Both the position numbers and the translations under genes were made by a program. Under the pieces are notes generated by a model. The model saw nothing but the letters and a program-made list of their open reading frames with translations. It searched no databases and was not told where the DNA came from. Shown here in pieces: positions 11,331 through 35,119 of a stretch of 35,540 nucleotides of DNA. The stretch's first letter is position 1; each line of letters starts with the position of its first letter. Source of the DNA: Octopus bimaculoides. Lineage: Eukaryota. The stretch covers positions 78,980,310 through 79,015,849 of the forward strand of contig NC_068987.1 of NCBI RefSeq assembly GCF_001194135.2. The letters are read 5' to 3'.

Positions 11331-11672
11331 TGCATATATATATATATATATATATANNNNNNNNNNNNNNNNNNNNNNNNNNNNNNNNNNNNNNNNNNNN
11401 NNNNNNNNNNNNNNNNNNNNNNNNNNNNNNNNNNNNNNNNNNNNNNNNNNNNNNNNNNNNNNNNNNNNNNNNNNNNNNNNNNNNNNNNNNNNNNNNNNNN
11501 NNNNNNNNNNNNNNNNNNNNNNNNNNNNNNNNNNNNNNNNNNNNNNNNNNNNNNNNNNNNNNNNNNNNNNNNNNNNNNNNNNNNNNNNNNNNNNNNNNNN
11601 NNNNNNNNNNNNNNNNNNNNNNNNNNNNNNNNNNNNNNNNNNNNNNNNNNNNNNNNNNNNNNNNNNNNNNNN

Positions 11673-12522: not shown

Positions 12523-12590
12523 TTTTCTTTTTCCTTTCTTTCTTTCTTCCTTTCTTTCTTCCTTTCTTTCTTTCTTTCTTTCTTTCTTTC
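12523..12590. repeat. (TTTC)n microsatellite
   Basis: Direct reading. Confidence 0.9.
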
Positions 12591-13330
12591 CATCTAACCA
12601 TGTTTTCATTCTTTCCATCTAACCATGTTTTCATTCTTTCCATCTAACCATGTTTTCATCNNNNNNNNNNNNNNNNNNNNNNNNNNNNNNNNNNNNNNNN
12701 NNNNNNNNNNNNNNNNNNNNNNNNNNNNNNNNNNNNNNNNNNNNNNNNNNNNNNNNNNNNNNNNNNNNNNNNNNNNNNNNNNNNNNNNNNNNNNNNNNNN
12801 NNNNNNNNNNNNNNNNNNNNNNNNNNNNNNNNNNNNNNNNNNNNNNNNNNNNNNNNNNNNNNNNNNNNNNNNNNNNNNNNNNNNNNNNNNNNNNNNNNNN
12901 NNNNNNNNNNNNNNNNNNNNNNNNNNNNNNNNNNNNNNNNNNNNNNNNNNNNNNNNNNNNNNNNNNNNNNNNNNNNNNNNNNNNNNNNNNNNNNNNNNNN
13001 NNNNNNNNNNNNNNNNNNNNNNNNNNNNNNNNTTCCATCTAACCATGTTTTCATTCTTTCCATCTAACCATGTTTTCTTTCTTTCCATCTAACCATGTTT
13101 TCATTCTTTCCATCTAACCATGTTTTCTTTCTTTCCATCTAACCATGTTTTCATTCTTTCCATCAAACCATGTTTTCATTCTTTCCATCAAACCATGTTT
13201 TCATTCTTTCCATCTAACCATGTTTTCATTCTTTCCATCTAACCATGTTTTCTTTCTTTCCATCTAACCATGTTTTCATTCTTTCCATCTAACCATGTTT
13301 TCATTCTTTCCATCTAACCATGTTTTCATC
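12588..13330. repeat. 25-bp minisatellite, unit TTCCATCTAACCATGTTTTCATTCT, spanning a gap
   Basis: Three units left of the gap (12588-12660) and twelve right of it (13033-13330); two single-base variants (...TTTCTTTCT and CATCAAACC); no spacers. Confidence 0.97.
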
Positions 13331-15651: not shown

Positions 15652-16206
15652 NNNNNNNNNNNNNNNNNNNNNNNNNNNNNNNNNNNNNNNNNNNNNNNNN
15701 NNNNNNNNNNNNNNNNNNNNNNNNNNNNNNNNNNNNNNNNNNNNNNNNNNNNNNNNNNNNNNNNNNNNNNNNNNNNNNNNNNNNNNNNNNNNNNNNNNNN
15801 NNNNNNNNNNNNNNNNNNNNNNNNNNNNNNNNNNNNNNNNNNNNNNNNNNNNNNNNNNNNNNNNNNNNNNNNNNNNNNNNNNNNNNNNNNNNNNNNNNNN
15901 NNNNNNNNNNNNNNNNNNNNNNNNNNNNNNNNNNNNNNNNNNNNNNNNNNNNNNNNNNNNNNNNNNNNNNNNNNNNNNNNNNNNNNNNNNNNNNNNNNNN
16001 NNNNNNNNNNNNNNNNNNNNNNNNNNNNNNNNNNNNNNNNNNNNNNNNNNNNNNNNNNNNNNNNNNNNNNNNNNNNNNNNNNNNNNNNNNNNNNNNNNNN
16101 NNNNNNNNNNNNNNNNNNNNNNNNNNNNNNNNNNNNNNNNNNNNNNNNNNNNNNNNNNNNNNNNNNNNNNNNNNNNNNNNNNNNNNNNNNNNNNNNNNNN
16201 NNNNNN

Positions 16207-16498: not shown

Positions 16499-18404
16499 TT
16501 ATGAGTAAATGTGTGTGTGTTTATGTTTGTGTAGATACAATAAGCGTCGAAGTAAAAGACCGCGAGGCTGGGGAAAAGAGAGACAGGAGGAATAGAGAGA
16601 GAGTGATAGATACGGAATCGGAGAGATACAGAGAGTGTGAGAGAGGGAGAGATATTATGAGAGAGAGCAAGAGAGAGAGAGGGGAGAGTGTGCGTGTGAA
16701 AAGGAGAGTGAATGTGCCTGTATGTTGTCTATTTAATGTTTGTAGTCTTTTCTACAACTCTGGATAAAATAACCTCCTCACACACACACACGCAGACACG
16801 CACACACGCACACACGCACACGCACACGCACTTACAAATAAAAAAGCACCAAACACACATACACACACACACACATACAGGCACACACACAATCTCTTGT
16901 TTCTTGGCCCACAGCTACACACGCATACACCTATTTCCCCAATGTTTTAGTGTACTCTCTCTCTCTCCTCTCACTCTTTCTCTCTCACGCACACAGACAA
17001 ACCAACACACATATATACACATACACAATATCAGCGTACGTACATTCAAACACAGAGATATCGCCTTCTCTTCTACGTCCTCTGCCTTATTTGCCCTACC
17101 CCCACCTTGCATGCTTGCGCGGCTTCGCACCAGGACGCTAGCGCACGTTCATGTATGTTTCTTTCGTTCTTTCATCCTCTCCAGCATTCTCTCTCTCTCT
17201 CTCTTTCAGTCCATCTCCCATCTATTTCTACTCTTTCTCTACACATTCACAAGCACTGAGTATTCTCTTTCTCTCCCTTTCTCTCTTTATTTTTTTCTAA
17301 CTCTCACGCGCACTCCCACAATCATCATTTTTCAGGCTGGTCTTGTTGATTTCTTAACACANNNNNNNNNNNNNNNNNNNNNNNNNNNNNNNNNNNNNNN
17401 NNNNNNNNNNNNNNNNNNNNNNNNNNNNNNNNNNNNNNNNNNNNNNNNNNNNNNNNNNNNNNNNNNNNNNNNNNNNNNNNNNNNNNNNNNNNNNNNNNNN
17501 NNNNNNNNNNNNNNNNNNNNNNNNNNNNNNNNNNNNNNNNNNNNNNNNNNNNNNNNNNNNNNNNNNNNNNNNNNNNNNNNNNNNNNNNNNNNNNNNNNNN
17601 NNNNNNNNNNNNNNNNNNNNNNNNNNNNNNNNNNNNNNNNNNNNNNNNNNNNNNNNNNNNNNNNNNNNNNNNNNNNNNNNNNNNNNNNNNNNNNNNNNNN
17701 NNNNNNNNNNNNNNNNNNNNNNNNNNNNNNNNNNNNNNNNNNNNNNNNNNNNNNNNNNNNNNNNNNNNNNNNNNNNNNNNNNNNNNNNNNNNNNNNNNNN
17801 NNNNNNNNNNNNNNNNNNNNNNNNNNNNNTGCATACTTTATTCCTACATATGTTTCAGATGATTACAACCTGTGTGATCCATAGGGATCTTTGATAGTAA
17901 AATTGTAACCTTCTCATCAGGGAAAGCATGGGAATCATCTTAAACGTAAGAGGAGTTCCTGCCTTAAAAACAGGAACTAAACCACAGTTATTTTGTGTTC
18001 TTTGCTACATTGGTTTCTATTAACCCATTTATTCTATCAGAAGAATTTTTATTCATTAAGATAGAAGAAATACACATAATTATATATAGGTGCTCCGTTA
18101 TTTTTCTGTGTAGAAGATCATGTTATTCCATCCAGTAGGTATGAGAGATTCTGCTGCTATTTGGGGAGGGTTAATTTCTACAGTTAATTCCTCTCGTCCA
18201 ATTGGACAACTATTGTTTTAAACTATCTAGGCTTAGCTACGGTTGGATAGACACCAATGGGTCAATAGGGTTAGGGCGCGCATGCATACGTACACCTACA
18301 CACGCGCGCGCGCATGCGTGCTATATATATCCATATCTTAAATTATAGAAAGATCCGATAATGAATGAATAAAATGAACAAAATAAAACAGAAGCAAAAA
18401 AAGA

Positions 18405-19067: not shown

Positions 19068-19433
19068 AAGCGTGAAGCTTCGTGGTTTTGTGGTTAGGGT
19101 TAGGGTTAGGGTTAGGGTTAGGGTTAGGGTATTCGGCTCACGGTCGTATAGTCGTATAGTCGTGAGTTCGATTCCCGGACGCCCGTTATATCCTTGAGCA
19201 AGTCACTTTATTTCACGTTGTTCCAGTCTACTAAGCTGGCAAAAATAAGTCGTGCCTGTATTTCAAAGGGCCAGCCTTGTCACATGGGGTGTCATGCTGA
19301 ATCTCCTTGAGAGCTACGTTAAGGGCATGCGTGTTTGAGCAGTGCTCAGCCACTTGCACGTTAATTTCACGAGTAAGCTGTTCCACTGAGCGGATCAATT
19401 GGAACATTCATCATCGTAACCGATGGAGTACCA
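19068..19433 (+). mobile_element. SINE family C (tRNA head + CORE-like domain), near full length
   Basis: B-box-like GAGTTCGATTCCC 19164-19176; CORE-like tccttgagcaagtcactttatttcacgttg; same domain as the minus copy at 28277-28535. Confidence 0.85.
19094..19129 (+). repeat. Interstitial telomeric-type repeat (TTAGGG)6 inside the SINE head
   Basis: Six perfect TTAGGG units between GTGG and TATTCGGCTCAC. Confidence 0.97.
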
Positions 19434-19437
19434 CTAA

Positions 19438-19630
19438 ACTGGCAGAGTGTTGGTAGATTGGTTACAATGTTGGAGAAATTGCTTAGTGGCATTCTGTCCG
19501 TCTTTACTTTCTGAGTTCAAATTTGCCTTTCATCCTTTCAGGATCAATAAAATAAGTACCAGTTGAGCACGGGGGTCGATGAAATCGATTAGCTCCACTC
19601 CACCAAATTTCAGGCCTTGTACTTATAATA
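19438..19630 (+). mobile_element. Family B copy directly after the family C copy
   Basis: ctggcagag...gtccgtctttactttctgagttcaaat|ttgcctttcatcctttcaggatcaataaaataagtaccagttgagcacgggggtcgat...aaatttcaggccttgt; about 15-bp internal deletion relative to 32041-32240. Confidence 0.85.
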
Positions 19631-24317: not shown

Positions 24318-24405
24318 CCTTCCGGTTTCCGAATATAAAGGATTTAAAGCAGGTTTGCAAACCTTCCGGTTTCCGAATATAAAGGATTTAAAGCAGGTTT
24401 GCAAA
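24318..24405. repeat. Perfect 44-bp tandem duplication
   Basis: CCTTCCGGTTTCCGAATATAAAGGATTTAAAGCAGGTTTGCAAA twice, no mismatches. Confidence 0.97.
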
Positions 24406-24699
24406 CGCAATACTCTGCATATTATTGATTTCATGTGCCAAAAAAATATTTTTTAAATGGATGAGGAAGAGTAAAACTTTGTATTTTTCTTTTGTTTGTC
24501 GCGTCTGTTATTTTATCCTTTGTTCTTGTTATTGAACTGTGGCCATAGTAGTGCAACATCTTAAGAAAATGTTTTAGTCAGTTATATGCATGCTGGTATT
24601 TCTGGCACATATTGATTTTTATCAATAGAGCAGCTAGATTACGTATATGAAATTTTGCTTCCTATATATCTTGGATTAGTAAATGCGTTAAATTTTCAA

Positions 24700-28175: not shown

Positions 28176-28276
28176 GACGAAGGACTCTAAAATAAGAATG
28201 AGTGAAGAATGAGTATATAGTGAGTGTGTTTATTTGGCAGAAAAAAAACAAAAAACAATGACCATGCCGAAATGCT

Positions 28277-28535
28277 GAGACCCCCTTCGGTCATGACTGA
28301 CCATGGGATTGCACCTAGAAAGTTACCCTCCCAGGCACAAGTCCGCGCAAGGCTGTTAATGGAAGACAAGCAGTCGCCCATGCATACCGGCCTTCCCTCT
28401 CCACGCCACAAGTCTTATCCAAGGGAAAGGCAAAGGGGCCGATACAGCTTGGCACCTGTGACGTCGCAACTCATTTCTACAGCTGAGTGAACTGGAGCAA
28501 CGTGAAATAAAGTGTCTTGCTCAAGAATACAACAC
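28277..28535 (-). mobile_element. SINE family C' (same CORE-like domain as C, different 3' body), head lost in gap
   Basis: Reverse complement ttcttgagcaagacactttatttcacgttgctccagttcactcagctg matches 19191-19238; downstream sequence unrelated to C. Confidence 0.85.
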
Positions 28536-29617
28536 NNNNNNNNNNNNNNNNNNNNNNNNNNNNNNNNNNNNNNNNNNNNNNNNNNNNNNNNNNNNNNNNN
28601 NNNNNNNNNNNNNNNNNNNNNNNNNNNNNNNNNNNNNNNNNNNNNNNNNNNNNNNNNNNNNNNNNNNNNNNNNNNNNNNNNNNNNNNNNNNNNNNNNNNN
28701 NNNNNNNNNNNNNNNNNNNNNNNNNNNNNNNNNNNNNNNNNNNNNNNNNNNNNNNNNNNNNNNNNNNNNNNNNNNNNNNNNNNNNNNNNNNNNNNNNNNN
28801 NNNNNNNNNNNNNNNNNNNNNNNNNNNNNNNNNNNNNNNNNNNNNNNNNNNNNNNNNNNNNNNNNNNNNNNNNNNNNNNNNNNNNNNNNNNNNNNNNNNN
28901 NNNNNNNNNNNNNNNNNNNNNNNNNNNNNNNNNNNNNNNNNNNNNNNNNNNNNNNNNNNNNNNNNNNNNNNNNNNNNNNNNNNNNNNNNNNNNNNNNNNN
29001 NNNNNNNNNNNNNNNNNNNNNNNNNNNNNNNNNNNNNNNNNNNNNNNNNNNNNNNNNNNNNNNNNNNNNNNNNNNNNNNNNNNNNNNNNNNNNNNNNNNN
29101 NNNNNNNNNNNNNNNNNNNNNNNNNNNNNNNNNNNNNNNNNNNNNNNNNNNNNNNNNNNNNNNNNNNNNNNNNNNNNNNNNNNNNNNNNNNNNNNNNNNN
29201 NNNNNNNNNNNNNNNNNNNNNNNNNNNNNNNNNNNNNNNNNNNNNNNNNNNNNNNNNNNNNNNNNNNNNNNNNNNNNNNNNNNNNNNNNNNNNNNNNNNN
29301 NNNNNNNNNNNNNNNNNNNNNNNNNNNNNNNCATGACAGTTACTTTGTTGAAGGTTGTATATACGCACATATATACATATGCATATACACATATGTAAAC
29401 ACACACACACATATATGTGTGTGTGTGCGTTTGCCCCTCTCACCATCGTCTAACGGTGAATTGATACAACGTCTTAGATACATATATGTACATATATAAC
29501 CTTACTTATACATATATAAACAAGTATACACAATCATATTGACACTCACACACGCTCACAAATATACATATTATCTTAAAGTATACATGCATATACGCTT
29601 AACCATCACTACACCTA

Positions 29618-32024: not shown

Positions 32025-32240
32025 TATTCTATTCTATACTAGGCACAAGGCCCGAAATTTTGGGGGAGGGGCCAGTTGATTAGATCGACCCTACTACGCA
32101 ACTGGTACTTAATTTATCGACCCCGAAAGGATGAAAGGCAAAGTTGACCTCGGCAGAATTTGAACTCAGAACGTAAAGACAGACGAGATATCGCTAAGCA
32201 TTTCGCCCGGCGTGCTAACGTTTCTGCCAGCTCGCCGCCT
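32025..32240 (-). mobile_element. SINE family B, best-preserved copy with (ATAGA)-type tail
   Basis: Sense strand AGGCGGCGAGCTGGCAGAAACGTTAGC...GAGTTCAAATTC...GTCAACTTTGCCTTTCATCCTTTCGGGGTCGATAAATTAAGTACCAG...AAAATTTCGGGCCTTGTGCCT. Confidence 0.92.
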
Positions 32241-32898
32241 TTTTCGACAACCCCTATTACCTCTGCATCTTTAACATACCTCTTAAACTCCTGACACCAC
32301 CAAAGTTCTACACCGTTAACATACCACTTGTACCCTCCACATCACCACAATACCATTGCTATATTCCTAACCCCTCATCATCTATACAGTCTGCTTTCTG
32401 AAACTATTACCTACACATCCTTGAAACAACTAATACTAATGACATACTCATATTCCAGCAGTAACATTAATAGCATTGCTCTACCATTGCAATACAACTA
32501 CTACTTATAGACCGTTATACTACTGACTCTAATAACATATAACCTTCACCTCGAACACCACTCTATGTCTCATCTCACATCTATGCACTGCAAAGTAGCA
32601 CTAGTGCAGCTATCACCATTACACAACATACACACTGCCATGCAAACTAAGGACATAACAATCTCGCCACTCTCACACAGCTGACACTTATCCTGTACCA
32701 AACACATATTTCCATAGCAGTGGCATAACACTTATTCTGTACAACAAATATCACCCCTACGTCATTAGCATATATTCTACACCTCTAATAGATCATGATT
32801 AAGATTGTTGTTACGAATGATTCCAGAAGTCGCACTTGCTCCTCCATACGTTTCAAACAATATATTTACAACTTTCCTCGTGACCTTTAACAATGTGA

Positions 32899-34907: not shown

Positions 34908-35119
34908 CACATTTTGACACAAGACCAGAAATTTCGGGGGACGAGGAAGTCAATTGGATCGACCCCACCCAGTGCTCAACTGGTACTTATTTTATCGACC
35001 CTGAAAGAATGAAAGGCAAAGCCGACGTCGGAGGAATTTGAACTCTGAACATACCCACGGGGTAAATGCCGCTAACGATTTCGCCTGGCGTACTAACGAT
35101 TCTGCTAGCTCGCAGCCTT
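34908..35119 (-). mobile_element. SINE family B, near full length
   Basis: ttttgacacaagaccagaaatttcggg...ctggtacttattttatcgaccctgaaagaatgaaaggcaaag...gaatttgaactc...ctaacgattctgctagctcgcagcct. Confidence 0.9.

What the first reader, a model, noticed from the sequence alone, without database searches (positions are those of the whole stretch)
19081..19176. Telomeric (TTAGGG)6 array expanded from within a SINE's tRNA-derived head
Seen: six perfect TTAGGG units sit between the A-box-like TGGTTTTGTGG and the rest of the head (TATTCGGCTCAC), followed by a second small duplication (GTCGTATA x2, 19143-19158) and an intact B-box-like motif. Established: TTAGGG is the telomere repeat of many metazoans including molluscs; tRNA D-loops often read GGUUA; four or more GGG tracts can form a G-quadruplex. 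Inference: the parent SINE has one native GG-TTAGGG-T that was amplified by slippage or telomerase-type repair, making this family a dispersed seed for interstitial telomeric sequence that may be transcribed by Pol III.
Basis: partly seen in the sequence, partly recalled or inferred. Interest (0 to 1): 0.7.

Follow-up and report, generated by a model that had tools for sequence, protein, structure and literature searches.

The report
Telomere repeats grown inside octopus SINE
One old copy of an octopus short interspersed element (SINE) has turned the single TTAGGG of its tRNA-like head into six perfect telomere-type repeats; this is a tidy but ordinary example of a mobile element seeding a short tandem repeat.

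Summary
Window 19094-19129 is (TTAGGG)6, perfect, lying between an A-box-like motif and the rest of a tRNA-like SINE head. An 8-bp tandem duplication and a B box follow. The window is Octopus DNA, and the element (about 19070-19434) is an old, roughly 15% diverged copy of a MIR-like CORE-SINE. I recovered relatives through spurious ORFs on its antisense strand. Nine other copies can be read across the site (four as DNA, five as ORFs), and all nine have exactly one unit there. The rough consensus is GTGG-TTAGGG-TATTCGGCTCAC, and no SINE sequence is lost or duplicated at the array edges. The mechanism is unresolved. I lean to telomerase priming on the native GGTTAGGG at a break (about 0.45) over duplication plus slippage (about 0.35). 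In 72 kb of octopod DNA, this is the only one of 70 perfect complex-unit repeats with more than three copies. The "dispersed seed" idea has no support (0 of 9 relatives expanded). Pol III read-through is doubtful, because a TTTT lies upstream of the array. It is a new member of known kinds (short interstitial telomeric sequence; transposon-borne microsatellite), of modest interest.

The parts
19070..19434 (+). The ends are approximate.
   Evidence: It aligns over head, CORE and body to 8 distinct loci on Logan contigs at 63-75% identity. It is 84.8% identical to a rough 9-sequence consensus. No target-site duplication was found.
19083..19093 (+). A-box-like motif TGGTTTTGTGG
   Evidence: Read directly from the sequence. 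It fits 9 of 11 positions of TRGCNNAGTGG. Relatives read TGGATTAGAGG, TGGGTCAGTTGG and TGACTTGGTGG.
19086..19089 (+). TTTT run inside the A box, a Pol III terminator-like signal upstream of the array
   Evidence: Read directly from the sequence. It is absent from L015, L017 and L021 at this position.
19094..19129 (+). (TTAGGG)6, perfect. The in-phase telomeric stretch is 19092-19130. One unit is native to the family and five are extra.
   Evidence: Relatives have a single unit. ViennaRNA with its G-quadruplex option places a G4 in the minimum-energy fold (-38.6 against -27.8 kcal/mol).
19130..19142 (+). Remainder of the D-arm and anticodon-arm-like head, TATTCGGCTCACG
   Evidence: Conserved as (A)TATTCGGC in L015 and L017, and as TATTTG / TATTCT in L021 / L018.
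19143..19163 (+). GTCGTATA x2.6; one 8-bp unit is a private tandem duplication
   Evidence: TRF and the repeat finder family D7. The alignment shows an 8-column gap in all relatives.
19165..19175 (+). B-box-like motif AGTTCGATTCC
   Evidence: Conserved in L015 (GAGTTCGATTCT) and weaker in L017 and L018.
19192..19250 (+). CORE domain (CCTTGAGCAAGTCACTTTATTTCAC...)
   Evidence: Shared with a second CORE-SINE copy at 28480-28535(-) at 87% identity. Aligns to the MIR CORE.
19234..19407 (-). Spurious 58-aa antisense ORF in the SINE body, used as the handle to find relatives
   Evidence: 32 ORF clusters at E<=1e-3 in the 1.84-billion-protein library. Consensus: S.EQ.A.EINVQVAEHSTDT.TLNVVL.EIQ.DT.CDK.GPL.
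19439..19625 (+). Adjacent 5'-truncated copy of the abundant octopus SINE. It is not part of the finding and marks the 3' limit of family C.
   Evidence: Translations of this family hit only Octopus bimaculoides proteins.

Best explanation
An old copy of an octopod CORE-SINE carries, like its relatives, one TTAGGG-like unit. That unit comes from the D-loop / 3' D-stem part of its tRNA-like head (GTGG-TTAGGG-TATTCGG). Long after the copy inserted, five more units were added exactly in register, with no loss or gain of flanking SINE sequence. This much is shown. For the mechanism I infer the following: a DNA break in or next to the native GGTTAGGG left a 3' end that matches the telomerase template. 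Telomerase added a few repeats, and end-joining resealed the break onto the T of TATTCGG. This is the route established for short interstitial telomeric sequences of vertebrates, except that here an 8-nt pre-existing seed primes it. The array is a by-product with no demonstrated function. Confidence is about 0.85 for the anatomy (post-insertional, in-register expansion of a native unit) and about 0.45 for the telomerase step; the number given in the confidence field is for the whole statement, mechanism included.
For: Nine of nine other copies have a single unit, and the flanks are collinear. The window copy is about 15% diverged from the rough consensus, yet the 39-nt array is perfect. At that divergence an equally old array would stay perfect with probability of about 0.85^36, roughly 0.003, so the array is much younger than the insertion. 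TTAGGG is the only experimentally determined cephalopod telomere motif (Adachi et al. 2014, as cited in PMC13218726). Sixty-nine of them have 2-2.8 copies, and only the telomeric hexamer exceeds 3, at 6.5. Ordinary stepwise growth of such units is therefore rare here, and the lone outlier is the telomerase product. Short interstitial telomeric sequences of vertebrates are reported to enter in one step at break sites (PMC8537989).
Against: No orthologous empty or intermediate allele could be examined, so one-step origin is not shown. Telomerase-mediated insertion of interstitial telomeric sequences has not been shown in molluscs. A pre-existing unit is the hallmark of ordinary microsatellite birth. 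PMC8537989 contrasts the vertebrate short interstitial arrays with precisely that. A slippage-type 8-bp duplication lies 13 bp away in the same copy. The relatives are diverged (63-75% identity) and come from sequencing runs of unknown species.
Confidence: 0.45

Rival explanations
1. This is ordinary microsatellite birth. A tandem duplication of the native unit, helped by the GG...GG microhomology in GGTTAGGG, gave two units. Replication slippage then took them to six. That the motif equals the telomere repeat is a coincidence of the tRNA D-loop sequence.
For: The family has a pre-existing unit at the site. A private slippage-type duplication (GTCGTATA, 1.6 to 2.6 copies) lies 13 bp downstream in the same copy. 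The window is extremely rich in simple repeats, with 152 TRF rows in 35.5 kb. Microsatellites born from SINEs and other retrotransposons are well documented (PMC3812793, PMC1634856).
Against: Sixty-nine of 70 perfect complex-unit repeats in 72 kb stop below 3 copies. All six units are perfect, with no intermediates. Established knowledge is that slippage of hexamers at low copy number is slow.
Confidence: 0.35
2. The array is an assembly or sequencing artefact of a gapped draft scaffold, for example a collapsed or chimeric join through telomere-like reads.
For: The window has 12 N gaps and is clearly a draft scaffold. I had no access to reads.
Against: The two sides of the array are the collinear halves of one SINE copy, with nothing missing. 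No gap lies within about 700 bp. The array is short enough (36 bp) to be spanned by single reads.
Confidence: 0.07
3. A telomeric fragment or telomerase product was inserted independently and merely happens to lie at the native unit. The seed played no causal role.
For: Vertebrate short interstitial telomeric sequences usually enter sites without pre-existing units (PMC8537989).
Against: The insertion would have to land exactly in register on the only TTAGGG of the element, with no deletion, filler or duplication. Most vertebrate insertions modify the break site: 24 of 29 informative loci in PMC8537989.
Confidence: 0.05
4. The array was already present in the source gene of a subfamily and was retrotransposed along with it.
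For: None was found. It cannot be excluded formally with only 9 relatives.
Against: None of the 9 relatives has more than one unit. None of the 35 related ORFs contains a PNPN, LTLT, VRVR or GLGL signature. The array is perfect while the copy is about 15% diverged.
Confidence: 0.03

Closest known systems
Short interstitial telomeric sequences (s-ITS) of vertebrates (Nergadze, Giulotto and co-workers; PMC8537989)
   Same: A few exact telomeric hexamers lie at an internal site, often inside or near transposons. The proposed origin is telomerase action during double-strand-break repair. At a minority of loci the flanks are unmodified.
   Different: Vertebrate s-ITS are described as entering sites without pre-existing units. 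Here the array is in register with a unit native to the SINE. No flank resembling telomerase RNA can be recognised, and the octopus telomerase RNA is not available to test this. The host is a mollusc. One-step origin is not shown.
Retrotransposon-borne (proto-)microsatellites, for example Alu- and tRNA-SINE-associated microsatellites (PMC3812793, PMC1634856)
   Same: A short motif present once or about 1.5 times in the element consensus becomes a tandem array in individual copies after insertion.
   Different: Known cases mostly involve A-rich tails or linkers and mono- to tetranucleotide units. Here a complex hexamer inside the Pol III promoter region (D-arm equivalent) is expanded, and it equals the host telomere repeat.
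CORE-SINE superfamily (MIR in vertebrates; OR1 in octopus, Ohshima and Okada 1994, as cited in PMC4824008)
   Same: It has a tRNA-like head with A and B boxes followed by the CCTTG.GCAAG..ACTT CORE domain. The consensus aligns to MIR from head to CORE. MIR reads TAGTGGTTAAGAGC where this family reads TAGTGGTTAGGGTA.
   Different: I could not obtain the OR1 sequence, so identity with OR1 is untested. The 3' body (19250-19434) has no match that I could name.
SINE-derived satellites, for example in scaled reptiles (PMC10702118)
   Same: A portion of a SINE is amplified in tandem.
   Different: In those cases the units are long SINE segments that form large arrays. Here it is a 6-bp unit, 36 bp in total, at one locus.

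Membership tests
tRNA-derived SINE (internal type 2 Pol III promoter) | A-box and B-box motifs in the 5' head | tested here: met
   The A box fits 9 of 11 positions at 19083-19093, and the B box fits 10 of 11 at 19165-19175. The A-B spacing in this copy is 38 bp longer than in relatives (30 + 8 bp).
tRNA-derived SINE (internal type 2 Pol III promoter) | Recognisable similarity of the head to a tRNA | tested here: inconclusive
   The Rfam tRNA model gives no hit at E<=10 in the window or in 8 relatives. ARAGORN finds nothing at default settings. At 90% of its threshold it draws a Val(CAC)-like cloverleaf for the head collapsed to 0 or 1 unit, and none with 2 or 6 units.
tRNA-derived SINE (internal type 2 Pol III promoter) | Short, dispersed, multi-copy | tested here: met
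   The element is about 330 bp. There are 8 distinct loci on Logan contigs, 32 ORF clusters, and a fragment inside an O. bimaculoides protein model.
tRNA-derived SINE (internal type 2 Pol III promoter) | Target-site duplications; LINE-related or simple-repeat 3' tail | tested here: inconclusive
   No flanking direct repeat was found. The copy is old and abuts another SINE. The 3' tail was not compared with LINEs.
CORE-SINE superfamily | The roughly 45-65-bp CORE domain after the head | tested here: met
   Local alignment to the MIR consensus scores 61 (family consensus) and 49 (window copy), against a shuffle mean of 20, sd 3, maximum 37.
Short interstitial telomeric sequence (s-ITS) | Exact host telomeric hexamers, a few to tens of units, at a non-terminal site | tested here: met
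   (TTAGGG)6 lies in the middle of a 35.5-kb window with unique and repeat sequence on both sides. TTAGGG is the cephalopod telomere motif according to PMC13218726. The position on the chromosome is unknown.
Short interstitial telomeric sequence (s-ITS) | Introduced in one step at a break site that had no pre-existing repeat (shown by comparison with an empty orthologous locus) | not testable with these tools
   No orthologous locus or second assembly could be retrieved. Paralogous copies show that a pre-existing unit was present, which departs from the vertebrate description.
Transposon-borne microsatellite | The motif is present in the element consensus at the position of the array | tested here: met
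   The rough consensus is GTGG-TTAGGG-TATTCGGCTCAC, and 9 of 9 relatives have a single unit.
Transposon-borne microsatellite | Stepwise length variation among alleles or orthologues | not testable with these tools
   No population or sister-species data were accessible.

The most novel reading that the evidence does not exclude
The D-loop-derived GGTTAGGG carried by this CORE-SINE family, and possibly by other tRNA-like heads, could be a preferred telomerase priming site at chromosome breaks. If so, octopod interstitial telomeric sequences would be anchored disproportionately in SINE heads. That would be the first evidence outside vertebrates for telomerase-mediated break repair, and for dependence on a seed supplied by a mobile element.
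Probability: 0.1. Interest if true: 0.6.

Novelty: new member of a known kind. Interest (0 to 1): 0.3.

Why it matters
If the expansion was telomerase-primed, this locus would be a natural example of seed-dependent telomerase action at an internal break in a mollusc. Until now that process has been documented from comparative genomics only in vertebrates, and there without seeds. It would also show how a widely dispersed SINE could spread potential sites for telomere-repeat addition, G-quadruplex formation and fragility. As it stands, the result is one short array in one decayed SINE copy. It is mainly useful as a clean worked example and as a marker candidate (a possibly length-polymorphic hexanucleotide locus).

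Tried and rejected
- A metagenome scan for TATTCGGCTCACGGTCGT gave 13 hits. All are chance bacterial matches with no SINE continuation.
The relatives are too diverged to share words.
- The same trick with the abundant neighbouring SINE gave 3 Octopus bimaculoides proteins. This identified the organism. Only one of them yielded DNA (L014, 39 kb, chromosome CM046612.1), which holds no family C copy and no telomeric run.
- P0001, P0003 and P0036 are not on record as genes.
- Searching papers for the SRR11869384-94 runs gave only an unrelated accession, so the species of the Logan contigs stays unknown.
- Rfam scans gave no tRNA or other credible RNA family in the region or in the relatives.
- ARAGORN at default settings finds nothing.
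- A search for target-site duplications found none.
- I rejected the idea that the 58-aa antisense ORF is a real gene. Its 'homologues' are simply other copies of the SINE, several of them fused to unrelated protein models.

Full report
**1. The observation**

Window 19094-19129 reads (TTAGGG)6 without a mismatch. With the in-phase GG before and T after, Tandem Repeats Finder (TRF) reports 19092-19130, period 6, 6.5 copies, 100% matches. It is the only run of two or more exact units in the 35.5-kb window. None of 100 dinucleotide-preserving shuffles reached the observed count.

- TGGTTTTGTGG lies on the left (19083-19093) and fits 9 of 11 positions of the A-box consensus.
- TATTCGGCTCAC lies on the right.
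- GTCGTATA x2.6 follows at 19143-19163.
- AGTTCGATTCC follows at 19165-19175 and fits 10 of 11 positions of the B-box consensus.

The window is a gapped draft scaffold with 12 N runs and 37.7% G+C. No gap lies within about 700 bp of the array.

**2. Organism and element**

The window is full of copies of a second, abundant SINE (for example 19439-19625, 32045-32260, 34919-35020 and 5997-6150). A six-frame translation of that SINE hits only Octopus bimaculoides proteins, so the window is Octopus DNA.

The element that holds the array runs from about 19070 to about 19434. Its parts are:
- a tRNA-like head;
- a CORE domain (CCTTGAGCAAGTCACTTTATTTCAC..., 19192-19250), shared at 87% identity with a second, head-less CORE-SINE copy at 28480-28535(-) that abuts an N gap;
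- a family-specific body.

The family consensus aligns to the MIR consensus from the head through the CORE with score 61, against 20+-3 for shuffles. Octopus is known to have a CORE-SINE, OR1 (PMC4824008). I could not test identity with OR1.

The 'tRNA-derived' label rests on the box motifs only:
- The Rfam tRNA model gives no hit.
- ARAGORN draws a Val-like cloverleaf only at relaxed thresholds, and only when the array is collapsed to 0 or 1 unit. In that drawing TTA ends the D loop and GGGT is the 3' strand of the D stem.

**3. Finding relatives**

The window holds no second head of this family. A metagenome scan gave only chance hits. A word-indexed protein search with the six-frame translation found nothing.

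A full HMMER scan with the 58-aa antisense ORF of the SINE body (19234-19407, minus strand) found 32 ORF clusters. They are clearly other copies of the element. A profile of them returned nine proteins. Eight of those lie on short Logan contigs from runs SRR11869384-94, giving eight distinct loci (L015-L028).

These contigs share other octopus repeats with the window and with the O. bimaculoides locus L014. Their species is unknown. They match the window element at 63-75% identity over up to 325 bp.

**4. The family state at the site**

Four loci can be read across the site at the DNA level:

| Copy | Sequence across the site |
|---|---|
| L021 | GGTGG-TTAGGG-TATTTG |
| L015 | AGAGG-CTAGGG-ATATTCGGCC |
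| L017 | AGTTG-GTAAGA-TATTCGGCAC |
| L018 | TTACT-TGGGG-TATTCTAC |

Five further copies are readable because their ORFs run through the head. P0005, P0011, P0019, P0022 and P0030 align collinearly to the one-unit head without a 2-residue repeat or an indel. One example is CEPNILTIEPRTF against REPNTLTTKPRSF.

So nine of nine relatives have exactly one unit. The rough consensus is GTGG-TTAGGG-TATTCGGCTCAC. Relative to it, the window copy has five extra units and nothing missing or duplicated at the edges.

The alignment also shows that one 8-bp GTCGTATA unit is private to the window copy.

**5. Timing**

The window copy is 84.8% identical to the rough consensus, so it is an old insertion. The 39-nt array is perfect. 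Had the array been as old as the copy, the chance of no substitution in 36 bp would be about 0.85^36, roughly 0.003. Either the expansion is much younger than the insertion, or the array is kept homogeneous by turnover. Inheritance from a source gene is not supported, because no relative and none of the 35 related ORFs carries the array.

**6. Mechanism**

Two known routes predict an in-register array with intact flanks.

(a) Telomerase. A break leaves a 3' end ...GGTTAG(GG) that pairs with the telomerase template. A few repeats are added, and the end is rejoined. This is the route proposed for vertebrate short interstitial telomeric sequences, which enter in one step at break sites (PMC8537989). 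TTAGGG is the experimentally determined cephalopod telomere motif (PMC13218726).

(b) Ordinary microsatellite birth. The pre-existing unit is duplicated and slippage follows, as documented for SINE- and LINE-borne microsatellites (PMC3812793, PMC1634856).

For (b): the seed exists, and a slippage-type duplication lies 13 bp away.

For (a): in the 72.3 kb of octopod DNA held here there are 70 perfect tandem repeats with complex units of 5-12 nt. Sixty-nine of them have 2-2.8 copies, and only the telomeric hexamer exceeds three, at 6.5. Duplications are therefore common, but further growth of complex units is not, and the single exception is the telomerase product.

I put about 0.45 on (a) and about 0.35 on (b). 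The rest goes to an artefact, a coincidental insertion, or inheritance from a source gene. Only the anatomy is shown; the mechanism is inferred.

**7.

- 'Dispersed seed': logically possible, because many copies carry GGTTAGGG or a near match. No other copy is expanded (0 of 9), and no genome-wide count was possible.
- 'May be transcribed by Pol III': this copy has TTTT at 19086-19089, inside the A box and upstream of the array. L015, L017 and L021 lack it at that position. Runs of four or more T are Pol III terminators (established knowledge). The A box is degenerate and the A-B distance is lengthened by 38 bp. Read-through of the array is therefore doubtful and untested.
- G-quadruplex potential: expected for six GGG tracts. 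ViennaRNA predicts it with its G-quadruplex option (-38.6 against -27.8 kcal/mol). That prediction says nothing about function.

**8. Comparison and novelty**

The feature is a short interstitial telomeric sequence by form and a transposon-borne microsatellite by origin of its seed. It differs from the vertebrate short interstitial arrays in having a pre-existing unit. It differs from the usual SINE microsatellites in three ways: the unit is a complex hexamer, it lies inside the promoter region, and it equals the host telomere repeat. I file it as a new member of known kinds, of modest interest. Interest would rise only if a census showed that octopus interstitial telomeric arrays concentrate at this SINE position.

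**9. Limits**

- Only nine relatives were available. They are diverged and come from unknown octopod runs.
- The consensus is rough.
- No reads, alleles or orthologues were accessible.
- The MIR sequence came from memory.

Noticed in passing
window 18265-18276: ATAGGGTTAGGG, two telomere-type units with one mismatch, lies about 820 bp upstream of the array. Its context is different (...GGTCAATAGGGTTAGGGCGCGC...) and follows a tRNA-like stretch, GGCTTAGCTACGGTTGGATAGAC. The expected chance count is about 0.05-0.15 per window, so it may be coincidence or another decayed SINE head.
   Followed up: partly
window 19234-19407 (-); proteins P0004, P0018, P0036: The antisense strand of the SINE body is an open 58-aa frame. 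Its 'homologues' are other SINE copies. Some are fused to real-looking protein models: an O. bimaculoides MFS transporter model (P0036) ends in 60 SINE-derived residues, and P0018 and P0004 carry the SINE-derived stretch internally or at the N-terminus. These are either exonised SINEs or annotation artefacts.
   Followed up: partly
window 12579-13329: A 25-bp minisatellite (TTCCATCTAACCATGTTTTCATTCT) has at least 15 copies at 97-98% identity and spans the N gap at 12661-13032.
   Followed up: no
window 24318-24406: A perfect tandem duplication of a 44-bp unit (CCTTCCGGTTTCCGAATATAAAGGATTTAAAGCAGGTTTGCAAA) is present.
   Followed up: no
window 28270-28535 (-): A second CORE-SINE family shares the CORE with family C at 87% identity but has a different 3' body. 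Its head is lost in the N gap at 28536-29331. The CORE regions of L024 and L026 match it at 82-91% identity.
   Followed up: partly
window, all 12 N gaps (e.g. 7187-7806, 8611-8967, 11357-11672, 15652-16206): Most assembly gaps are bordered by di-, tri- or tetranucleotide microsatellites. This suggests that the gaps are unresolved simple repeats, and it shows how repeat-rich this genome is (152 TRF rows in 35.5 kb).
   Followed up: no
L023 about 1045-1120 (locus + strand; read as reverse complement): Upstream of the family C body in this Logan contig lies a different tRNA-like head (GGCCTAGTGCGTAGGGAAGG...GGTGTTTCGATTCCC). It also reads (G)TAGGG after the A-box-like motif. A related or composite SINE may therefore share the D-loop motif.
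   Followed up: no
window 19086-19089: The A box of this copy has mutated to contain TTTT, a Pol III terminator-like run. Relatives L015, L017 and L021 lack it at this position, while L018 has TTTTT there.
   Followed up: yes
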